Shown: in pieces, positions 32,460 through 32,551 of the stretch
How the letters are laid out: each line of letters starts with the position of its first letter
Position numbering within the stretch: the stretch's first letter is position 1
Origin: Octopus sinensis
Taxonomy: Eukaryota
Assembly: GCF_006345805.1 (NCBI RefSeq)
Contig: NW_021834557.1
Coordinates: 1 to 47,587 of the forward strand
Direction of reading: 5' to 3'
DNA: 47,587 nucleotides
The notes under the pieces: model-generated
What the model saw: the letters and a program-made list of their open reading frames with translations, nothing else
The model's database searches: none
What the model was told of the DNA's origin: nothing
Translations under genes and position numbers: made by a program

Positions 32460-32551
32460 GCCCGCAAAGCTCAGTCGGTAGAGCATCAGACTTTTAAGAA
32501 CTGTCGAGTGATGAAATCTGAGGGTCACGGGTTCAAGTCCCTCTGCGAGGG
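32460..32551 (+). tRNA. Intron-containing tRNA-Lys(UUU) gene, probably a pseudogene
   Basis: GCCCGCAAAGCTCAGTCGGTAGAGCATCAGACTTTTA [19-nt intron 32497-32515] ATCTGAGGGTCACGGGTTCAAGTCCCTCTGCGAGGG. 73 nt after intron removal; D and anticodon stems intact; acceptor stem 5/7 and T stem 3/5 paired. Confidence 0.85.

What the first reader, a model, noticed from the sequence alone, without database searches (positions are those of the whole stretch)
32460..32551. tRNA-Lys(UUU) with a canonical 19-nt intron
Seen: the intron lies exactly after position 37 and removal gives a 73-nt tRNA. C32 can pair with the G three bases before the 3' splice site, the anticodon-intron pair used by eukaryotic splicing endonuclease. 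Known: animal tRNA introns are mostly in Tyr-GUA, Leu-CAA, Ile-UAU and Arg-UCU, whereas Lys-UUU introns are familiar from fungi. Inference: a lineage-specific intron gain (or foreign origin), and functional paralogs should exist. This copy has stem mismatches, an altered position 8 and no T4 terminator.
Basis: partly seen in the sequence, partly recalled or inferred. Interest (0 to 1): 0.7.

Follow-up and report, generated by a model that had tools for sequence, protein, structure and literature searches.

The report
Decayed intron-bearing tRNA-Lys(UUU) pseudogene in octopus
This is a broken, single copy of an octopus lysine-tRNA gene that still carries a genuine-looking 19-base tRNA intron; intact genes with this intron are common in marine eukaryote DNA, at least some of it animal, so it is a modest curiosity, not a new kind of element.

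Summary
Window 32460-32551 (+) is a tRNA-Lys(UUU)-like sequence with a 19-nt insert (32497-32515) exactly between positions 37 and 38. It is the only tRNA hit in the window (Rfam 35.1 bits, E 9.6e-4). The insert behaves like a real eukaryotic tRNA intron. It has A at +1, G at +2, G at -3 (able to pair with C32) and A38. In 110 intact intron-bearing Lys-UUU genes recovered from metagenome and viral contigs, G(-3) and A38 are invariant. Its first 10 nt equal the start of one intact intron (L122).

The copy itself is almost certainly dead. Only 17 of 21 stem pairs form, position 8 is A instead of U, and the first T4 run is 650 nt downstream, past an inserted SINE. It scores 35 bits against 58-62.5 bits for intact genes.

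The window comes from an octopod: a LINE ORF is 85% identical to an Octopus bimaculoides protein. Intron-bearing Lys-UUU genes with animal-type exons are abundant in marine eukaryote contigs, and giant-virus versions are unrelated. Whether intact octopus paralogues exist could not be tested with these tools. Novelty: new member of a known kind. Interest is low to moderate.

The parts
32460..32496 (+). 5' exon of the tRNA-Lys(UUU) pseudogene (nt 1-37). Contains the acceptor 5' strand GCCCGCA, A8 at 32467 (normally U), an intact D arm, the anticodon-stem 5' strand, C32 at 32491 and anticodon TTT at 32493-32495.
   Evidence: Rfam alignment; ARAGORN on the spliced sequence; stem table; alignment to intact genes.
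32497..32515 (+). 19-nt intron-like insert AGAACTGTCGAGTGATGAA at the canonical 37/38 site. It has +1 A, +2 G and G(-3) at 32513. Flanking A residues make the placement ambiguous by one base.
   Evidence: ARAGORN i(38,19). End rules from the 57 unique introns of animal-type genes: +1 A in 50/57, +2 G in 46/57, -3 G in 57/57, -4 A in 47/57 (the window has T). The 10-nt prefix is shared with the L122 intron.
32516..32551 (+). 3' exon (nt 38-73). Contains A38, the anticodon-stem 3' strand, variable loop GGGTC, a damaged T stem (ACGGG/CCCTC), an intact T loop/B box GGTTCAAGTCC, the acceptor 3' strand TGCGAGG (A70 at 32548, G72 at 32550) and discriminator G.
32552..32564 (+). 13-nt spacer ATATGATTTATAG between the tRNA end and the SINE. 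It has only a T3 run, so there is no Pol III terminator.
   Evidence: Direct reading. The first TTTT is at 33201. Intact genes mostly have T4 within 0-9 nt.
32565..33042 (+). Copy of a tRNA-derived SINE (head GGCGTAGGAGTGGCTGTGTGG..., internal (TA)n, tail (GTAAAAGA)n). It is not part of the tRNA-Lys unit and was inserted just downstream of it.
   Evidence: At least 10 copies in the window. Their 5' ends align from GGCG and none has the Lys sequence upstream. 3' ends were aligned.
32007..32235 (+). Copy of a second SINE family, 225 nt upstream. The stretch between it and the tRNA (32236-32459) is unique in the window.
33131..33199 (+). Diverged fragment of the second SINE family's 3' domain, downstream of the inserted SINE.
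   Evidence: 72-83% identity over 35-71 nt to 32125-32192 and other copies.

Best explanation
The locus is a decayed DNA-level copy (pseudogene) of a nuclear, intron-containing tRNA-Lys(UUU) gene in an octopod genome.

How the parent gene worked is inferred from established knowledge. RNA polymerase III transcribes it from the internal A and B boxes. The pre-tRNA carries a 19-nt intron between nt 37 and 38. The tRNA splicing endonuclease cuts at fixed distances from the tRNA body, helped by the C32:G(-3) anticodon-intron (proximal) base pair and the 3-nt bulge (-2, -1, A38). An RtcB-type ligase then joins the exons, and in animals the intron may be circularised.

This copy kept the intron and its end signals but accumulated disabling changes: U8 to A, two broken acceptor pairs, two broken T-stem pairs, and a changed base at intron -4. 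It has no nearby terminator, and a SINE landed about 13 nt downstream. It is therefore very unlikely to yield a chargeable tRNA. At most it gives an unstable read-through transcript.

Shown here: the tRNA-Lys ancestry, the intron position and end signals, the damage, the single-copy status in the window, the neighbouring SINE, and the octopod source. Inferred: that the insert was spliced in the parent gene, that intact paralogues exist, and that this copy is silent.
For: - Identity and position.
- Damage relative to intact genes: 17/21 stem pairs against 20-21/21 in 109 of 110 intact genes; 35.1 bits against 58-62.5 bits on the same Rfam model; A8 where all intact genes have T8. On the spliced sequence the cloverleaf (-18.5 kcal/mol) is less stable than a non-cloverleaf MFE fold (-22.5).
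- Terminator: 94/110 intact genes have T4 within 30 nt, mostly 0-9 nt. In the window the first TTTT is 650 nt away, or 156 nt in the reconstructed pre-SINE site.
- Genuine intron ancestry: G(-3) and A38 are invariant in 110/110 intact genes and present here. +1 A and +2 G follow the majority. The best full-length matches, intron included, are L040, L041 and L122. The shared 10-nt intron prefix was reached in 3/5000 constrained shuffles.
- Divergence of a once-functional octopod gene: acceptor pairs 6-67 and 7-66 differ from the intact subgroup by double, pair-preserving changes.
- Not a retrocopy of mature tRNA: the intron is retained and no CCA follows nt 73.
- Not a repeat: there is no second copy in the window, and the flanks are unique or unrelated.
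- Octopod source.
- Mechanism background: PMC4090602; PMC6614914, which reports a C-G proximal pair in all 16 fly intronic tRNAs, an invariant 3-nt bulge and 6 nt from the pair to the exon end.
Against: - No intact octopus paralogue was seen, because no cephalopod genome could be scanned.
- The isolated anticodon arm plus intron folds with the 3' splice site inside a helix and C32 bulged. However, MFE also fails to show the C32:G(-3) pair in 50 of 57 intact genes, so this test has little power.
- The intron similarity to L122 is modest on a global score (140/5000 constrained shuffles), and the prefix statistic was chosen after seeing the data.
- The B box is intact, so some transcription cannot be excluded.
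Confidence: 0.8

Rival explanations
1. It is a functional, if unusual, intron-containing tRNA-Lys(UUU) gene that is transcribed, spliced and used in translation.
For: It scores above the Rfam gathering threshold. The D arm, anticodon arm and B box are intact, and the intron end signals (+1 A, +2 G, G-3, A38) are preserved.
Against: Four of 21 stem pairs are broken, including 1-72. A8 replaces the near-universal U8. There is no terminator for 650 nt. It scores 23-27 bits below intact relatives. The cloverleaf is not the most stable fold.
Confidence: 0.04
2. It is the tRNA-like head of a tRNA-Lys-derived SINE or other repeat, and the 19 nt are a family-specific insertion and not an intron.
For: The window is packed with tRNA-derived SINEs. 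Octopus is known to have several tRNA-derived retroposon families (Ohshima and Okada 1994, cited in PMC4758252). A diverged SINE 3'-domain fragment lies downstream.
Against: There is no second copy in 47.6 kb that holds dozens of SINEs. The other SINE heads score no more than 18.5 bits against a Lys-UUU profile, versus 58.3 bits for this copy. They also have other anticodon regions and no insert. The flanks are unique. The spacing to the downstream fragment does not match that SINE family's architecture. The insert obeys the intron end rules.
Confidence: 0.07
3. It is a pseudogene of an intronless tRNA-Lys(UUU) gene, and the 19 nt were inserted by chance at position 37/38 after the gene died.
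For: Pseudogenes accumulate indels. [quoted passage not shown]
Against: Several things would have to coincide: the exact canonical site (about 3 of 73 placements), the start AG, G at -3, a length in the modal 19-20 nt class of intact introns, and a 10-nt prefix identical to a bona fide intron.
Confidence: 0.06
4. It is of foreign origin, for example acquired from a giant virus or another eukaryote that has intron-bearing Lys-UUU genes.
For: Giant-virus-type contigs do carry intact intron-bearing tRNA-Lys(UUU) genes with the same anticodon arm.
Against: The viral genes have acceptor GCCTTAC/GTAGGGC and AT-rich introns unrelated to this one. The window copy's exons are of the GCCCG... animal type. 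It sits among octopod SINEs and LINEs with no other foreign-looking sequence.
Confidence: 0.02

Closest known systems
Intron-containing nuclear tRNA genes of animals (Tyr-GTA, Leu-CAA, Ile-TAT, Arg-TCT in human; 16 genes in Drosophila)
   Same: The intron is at 37/38. The proximal (anticodon-intron) pair is C32:G(-3) with a 3-nt bulge, and there are 6 nt from C32 to the exon end. The intron is short. Splicing is expected by TSEN and an RtcB-type ligase (PMC11747266; PMC6614914).
   Different: The isoacceptor is Lys-UUU, which is not on the human list or, from memory, the fly list. This copy is damaged and lacks a terminator.
Intron-bearing tRNA-Lys(UUU) genes recovered here from marine and host-associated metagenome contigs (e.g. 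L122, L066, L018, L040, L041)
   Same: The D arm and anticodon arm are identical. The intron is at the same site and of similar length (16-20 nt against 19). The end signals AG...G(-3) and A38 match. The prefix AGAACTGTCG is shared with L122, and full-length identity to L040 and L041 is 87%.
   Different: Those genes have 20-21/21 stem pairs, T8, a T-run terminator and 58-62.5 Rfam bits. Their acceptor is GCCCGGT/ATCGGGC where the window has GCCCGCA/TGCGAGG. Their source organisms are unidentified.
Fungal tRNA-Lys(UUU) genes with introns (S. cerevisiae)
   Same: Same isoacceptor and same canonical intron position. S. cerevisiae has 61 intron-containing genes for 10 isodecoders (PMC4090602). 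That Lys-UUU is one of them comes from my own knowledge.
   Different: The yeast exons, especially the anticodon stem, are different (from memory, not tested here). The window copy's exons are of the animal type.
tRNA pseudogenes and tRNA-derived SINE heads as flagged by tRNAscan-SE
   Same: A covariance score between noise and true genes, with loss of stem pairing, which is the pattern described for pseudogenes (PMC8450103).
   Different: It is single-copy in the window and far closer to real tRNA-Lys than the four SINE heads present. It also keeps an intron, which retrocopies of mature tRNA would lack.

Membership tests
Functional eukaryotic nuclear tRNA-Lys(UUU) gene | Cloverleaf with essentially fully paired stems | tested here: not met
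   17/21 pairs form. G1.G72, C3.A70, A49.C65 and C50.U64 are mismatched. Of 110 intact genes, 109 have 20-21/21.
Functional eukaryotic nuclear tRNA-Lys(UUU) gene | U at position 8 (tertiary pair with A14; first base of the A box) | tested here: not met
   A at 32467. All aligned intact genes have T.
Functional eukaryotic nuclear tRNA-Lys(UUU) gene | Anticodon UUU in a 7-nt loop after intron removal | tested here: met
   Loop CTTTTAA. ARAGORN calls Lys(ttt) on the spliced sequence.
Functional eukaryotic nuclear tRNA-Lys(UUU) gene | Internal Pol III promoter (A box and B box) | tested here: inconclusive
   The B box GGTTCAAGTCC is intact. The A box reads AAGCTCAGTCGG where intact genes have TAGCTCAGTCGG. 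The effect on transcription is unknown.
Functional eukaryotic nuclear tRNA-Lys(UUU) gene | Pol III terminator (T4 or longer) shortly after nt 73 | tested here: not met
   The first TTTT is at 33201, 650 nt away (156 nt in the pre-SINE site). 94/110 intact genes have T4 within 30 nt.
Functional eukaryotic nuclear tRNA-Lys(UUU) gene | Covariance-model score in the range of bona fide genes | tested here: not met
   35.1 bits against 58-62.5 bits for 17 intact intron-bearing Lys-UUU genes on the same model.
Canonical eukaryotic tRNA intron (TSEN substrate) | Located between nt 37 and 38 | tested here: met
   and direct reading.
Canonical eukaryotic tRNA intron (TSEN substrate) | Proximal (anticodon-intron) base pair between nt 32 and intron -3, leaving a 3-nt bulge at the 3' splice site | tested here: inconclusive
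   The sequence allows C32:G(-3), and G(-3) is invariant in 110/110 intact genes. However, MFE folding pairs the 3' splice site and bulges C32. The same method shows the pair in only 7/57 intact genes. The -4 base is T, where 47/57 have A.
Canonical eukaryotic tRNA intron (TSEN substrate) | Six nt from the 5' base of the proximal pair to the end of exon 1 | tested here: met
   C32..A37 is 6 nt. The rule is stated in PMC6614914.
Canonical eukaryotic tRNA intron (TSEN substrate) | Actually excised from a pre-tRNA | not testable with these tools
   Needs RNA data (tRNA-seq, intron junction reads).
tRNA pseudogene (DNA-level decayed copy) | Clear tRNA ancestry plus several disabling changes, without the marks of a mature-tRNA retrocopy | tested here: met
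   nhmmer gives 58.3 bits, E 2.9e-17, against a Lys-UUU profile. Defects are listed above. The intron is retained and no CCA follows nt 73.
tRNA-derived SINE | Many dispersed copies sharing head, body and tail | tested here: not met
   No second copy in the window. The flanks are unique. The genome-wide copy number is not testable here.

The most novel reading that the evidence does not exclude
The functional tRNA-Lys(UUU) genes of octopods carry this intron. On this reading it belongs to an old intron family spread across marine invertebrates, with shared AG...G(-3) ends and, in one subgroup, the AGRACTGTCG start. That would add Lys-UUU to the short textbook list of animal intron-bearing isoacceptors and give a second deep-conserved animal tRNA intron family to study, for example for intron-dependent anticodon-loop modification or circular intron RNAs.
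Probability: 0.45. Interest if true: 0.4.

Novelty: new member of a known kind. Interest (0 to 1): 0.25.

Why it matters
By itself the locus is a dead tRNA gene and matters little. Its value is as a fossil. It implies that octopod Lys-UUU genes have, or once had, a canonical intron. The comparison set gathered here shows that intron-bearing Lys-UUU genes with animal-type exons are widespread in marine eukaryote DNA, although the commonly quoted animal list (Tyr, Leu-CAA, Ile-TAT, Arg-TCT) omits them.

If a genome-wide scan confirms this, the picture of which tRNA families keep introns in animals would be slightly revised. It would also offer a natural series of introns with an invariant G(-3) for studying splice-site recognition.

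Tried and rejected
- ARAGORN at default settings, with or without introns, finds nothing. Only lowered thresholds or removal of the insert give the call.
- An intron-specific pattern scan of metagenome contigs found nothing.
- I tried to name the organisms behind the intact genes. A CDI-domain neighbour and an LRR/LRRNT ORF gave almost only unnamed metagenome relatives. Sample and record ids (3300027377, 3300004085, SRR6231233, ERZ27247867) are not mentioned in any searchable paper. From memory, the Ga0056xxx, Ga0126xxx and Ga0209xxx series are gutless marine oligochaete symbiosis metagenomes. This is untested and is not used as evidence.
- I tried to recover the same or an orthologous locus through the exact LINE ORF 9 kb away. 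It is not on record.
- Literature searches for Lys-UUU introns in molluscs, annelids or spiralians found nothing relevant. The O. minor genome paper gives no tRNA detail, and the O. bimaculoides paper is not held.
- The apparent 8-nt target-site duplication GAGGGATA around the SINE is not secure, because GAG belongs to the SINE tail consensus.
- Isolated-arm MFE folding is uninformative as a splice-site test, because it fails on most intact genes too.
- I rejected the idea that the tRNA is the 5' part of the adjacent SINE. Other copies of that SINE start at GGCG and have no Lys sequence upstream.
- I rejected kinship with the six weak Lys-profile hits. They are heads of other SINE families.

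Full report
**What is there**

The Rfam tRNA model matches window 32460-32551 (+) at 35.1 bits (gathering score 29, E 9.6e-4), with about 20 nt inserted in the anticodon loop. It is the only family above threshold in the 47.6-kb window. A permissive scan adds only microsatellite noise. ARAGORN finds nothing at default settings, even with introns allowed. After removing 32497-32515 it calls tRNA-Lys(ttt) at default settings. With the insert in place it calls tRNA-Lys(ttt) i(38,19) only at a lowered threshold.

Direct reading gives exon 1 at 32460-32496, a 19-nt insert AGAACTGTCGAGTGATGAA at 32497-32515, and exon 2 at 32516-32551. The spliced length is 73 nt. The D stem (4/4) and anticodon stem (5/5) are intact. 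The acceptor stem has G1.G72 and C3.A70 mismatches, and the T stem has A49.C65 and C50.U64.

**Context**

The window is octopod DNA. The endonuclease ORF of a broken LINE (22626-23450, minus strand) is 85% identical to an Octopus bimaculoides protein. One unnamed hit is at 73%, and every other hit, and every other named hit, is at or below 58%. The neighbouring ORF has a reverse-transcriptase domain.

The window is dense with tRNA-derived SINEs. One family starts 13 nt after the tRNA (from about 32565, GGCGTAGG...) and has at least 10 copies. Their 5' ends align from GGCG, and none has Lys-like sequence upstream. A second family lies at 32007-32235. Two further families have tRNA-like heads with other anticodon regions and no insert. 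They score no more than 18.5 bits against a Lys-UUU profile, versus 58.3 bits for the locus.

The Lys unit has no second copy in the window. Its 5' flank is unique, and the sequence beyond the SINE holds only a diverged fragment of the second family. It is therefore not part of a multi-copy element as far as this window shows.

**Is the insert an intron?**

No cephalopod genome can be searched with these tools. Instead I scanned public collections for the anticodon arm of this tRNA with an 8-38-nt gap (CAGACTTTTA...TCTGAGGGTC).

- Viral contigs gave six hits. Five are intact intron-bearing tRNA-Lys(UUU) genes, two of them from giant-virus bins, with acceptor GCCTTAC and AT-rich introns unrelated to the window copy.
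- Of the 135 extractable candidates, 110 have at least 19/21 stem pairs and T8. 94 of those have a T4 run within 30 nt, mostly within 0-9 nt. About 74 candidates have the GCCCGG acceptor of animal-type exons (GCCCGG...CGGGCG).
- All 110 have G at intron -3 and A at position 38.
- Among the 57 unique introns of animal-type genes, +1 is A in 50, +2 is G in 46 and -4 is A in 47.

The window insert has A, G, G(-3) and A38, and deviates only at -4 (T). These rules match the experimentally defined determinants in flies. There the proximal pair is C-G in all 16 intronic tRNAs, the 3-nt bulge at the 3' cut site is invariant, and there are six nucleotides from the pair to the exon end (PMC6614914). They also fit the ruler mechanism of the eukaryotic endonuclease (PMC4090602).

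The window's best full-length matches, intron included, are L040 and L041 (87%) and L122. The first 10 nt of its intron are identical to L122's (AGAACTGTCG). Significance depends on the null. A full shuffle reaches the global score in 9/2000 trials. A constrained shuffle reaches it in 140/5000, and reaches a prefix of 10 or more in 3/5000. The prefix statistic was chosen after the fact, so I treat sequence homology of the intron as suggestive. The end rules are the stronger argument.

**Is this copy alive?**

Almost certainly not.

- Intact intron-bearing Lys-UUU genes score 58-62.5 bits on the model that gives this copy 35.1 bits.
- It has four broken stem pairs, where 109 of the 110 intact genes have zero or one.
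- It has A8.
- Its cloverleaf (-18.5 kcal/mol) is less stable than an alternative fold (-22.5).
- The first T4 run is 650 nt downstream, beyond the SINE. Joining the flanks of the SINE still leaves 156 nt without a T4 run.
- The B box is intact and the A box is changed only at its first base, so read-through transcription cannot be excluded.

The retained intron and the absence of CCA after nt 73 show that it is not a retrocopy of mature tRNA.

Aligned with the closest intact subgroup, acceptor pairs 6-67 and 7-66 differ by double changes that keep pairing (G.T to C-G, T-A to A-T). The changes at 8, 49/50, 70 and 72 are unpaired. That pattern is what one expects from a functional octopod gene that diverged under selection and then died.

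**Where the intact genes come from**

Some of the contigs are eukaryotic, and some look animal. Three contigs have a CDI (Cip/Kip) domain ORF about 1 kb from the tRNA, above the Pfam cutoff, and its relatives recur in many samples. One contig has an LRR protein with an LRRNT cap, one a U3 snoRNA, and one a LINE-like remnant, which I judged by eye without a Pfam hit.

I could not name the phyla. Homologues are almost all unnamed, and the sample ids are not in searchable papers. None of the contigs shares repeats with the octopus window.

**Comparison with what is known**

[quoted passage not shown] I found no paper reporting Lys-UUU introns in molluscs or other spiralians. The data here nevertheless show that such genes are common in marine eukaryote DNA.

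**Verdict**

The locus is a pseudogene of an intron-containing tRNA-Lys(UUU) gene (confidence 0.8). The rivals are a functional gene (0.04), a SINE head (0.07), a chance insertion (0.06) and foreign origin (0.02).

It is a new member of a known kind. Interest is low to moderate (0.25). The more interesting implication is that octopod and other marine-invertebrate Lys-UUU genes carry an old canonical intron. That awaits a genome-wide tRNA scan and RNA data.

Noticed in passing
window 32565-33042 and at least 9 other places (e.g. 13600-14032, 39803-40244, 264-687 minus strand, 43790-44061, 43987-44265 minus strand): An abundant tRNA-derived SINE with head GGCGYAGGAGTGGCTGTGTGGTAAG, an internal (TA)n/(TG)n microsatellite and a (GTAAAAGA)n tail. 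Most copies are flanked by TA-rich sequence, which suggests a TA-rich target preference.
   Followed up: partly
window 3305-3375, 7935-8011, 37685-37756 (minus strand); and 15532-15601 (minus strand), 28194-28263, 30364-30424 (blastn only; strand not determined), 41579-41645 (minus strand): Two further SINE families whose heads are generic tRNA-like (A and B boxes) but not Lys-derived. They gave weak hits to a Lys-UUU profile.
   Followed up: partly
window 20342-23450 (minus strand): A broken non-LTR retrotransposon with separate ORFs for endonuclease (85% identical to an O. bimaculoides protein), reverse transcriptase (RVT_1, 61 bits) and a C-terminal region. The ORFs were searched as separate pieces.
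   Followed up: partly
L002-L006 (viral contigs); the same contigs recur in the metagenome set as L025, L032, L064 and L093: Contigs of 84-130 kb, two of them from giant-virus bins, carry intact tRNA-Lys(UUU) genes with 10-24-nt AT-rich introns, G at -3 and acceptor GCCTTAC.
   Followed up: partly
L065 380-472 and 1578-2300; L020; L105/L037; L127-L132: In several metagenome samples an intron-bearing tRNA-Lys(UUU) gene lies about 1 kb from a Cip/Kip-type CDK-inhibitor (CDI domain) gene. The CDI proteins are 52-72% identical across samples, which points to conserved synteny in a group of related, unidentified animals.
   Followed up: partly
L010, L016, L020, L037, L043, L065, L083 and others (intron AGCTCTGA...CTCAGNA): A common intron type contains copies of both strands of the anticodon stem (TCTGA and CTCAG). 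The isolated arm therefore folds into two alternative hairpins instead of the canonical stem. A possible role in folding or splicing was not explored.
   Followed up: no
L038 1318-1538: A U3 snoRNA gene (152 bits) sits among tRNA genes, including an intron-bearing Lys-UUU, on a sediment metagenome contig.
   Followed up: no
window 3971-4669 and 25031-26625: Long low-complexity tracts give spurious ORFs rich in N/D/I or S/F/L/H/R on both strands. They are simple-repeat DNA, not genes.
   Followed up: no
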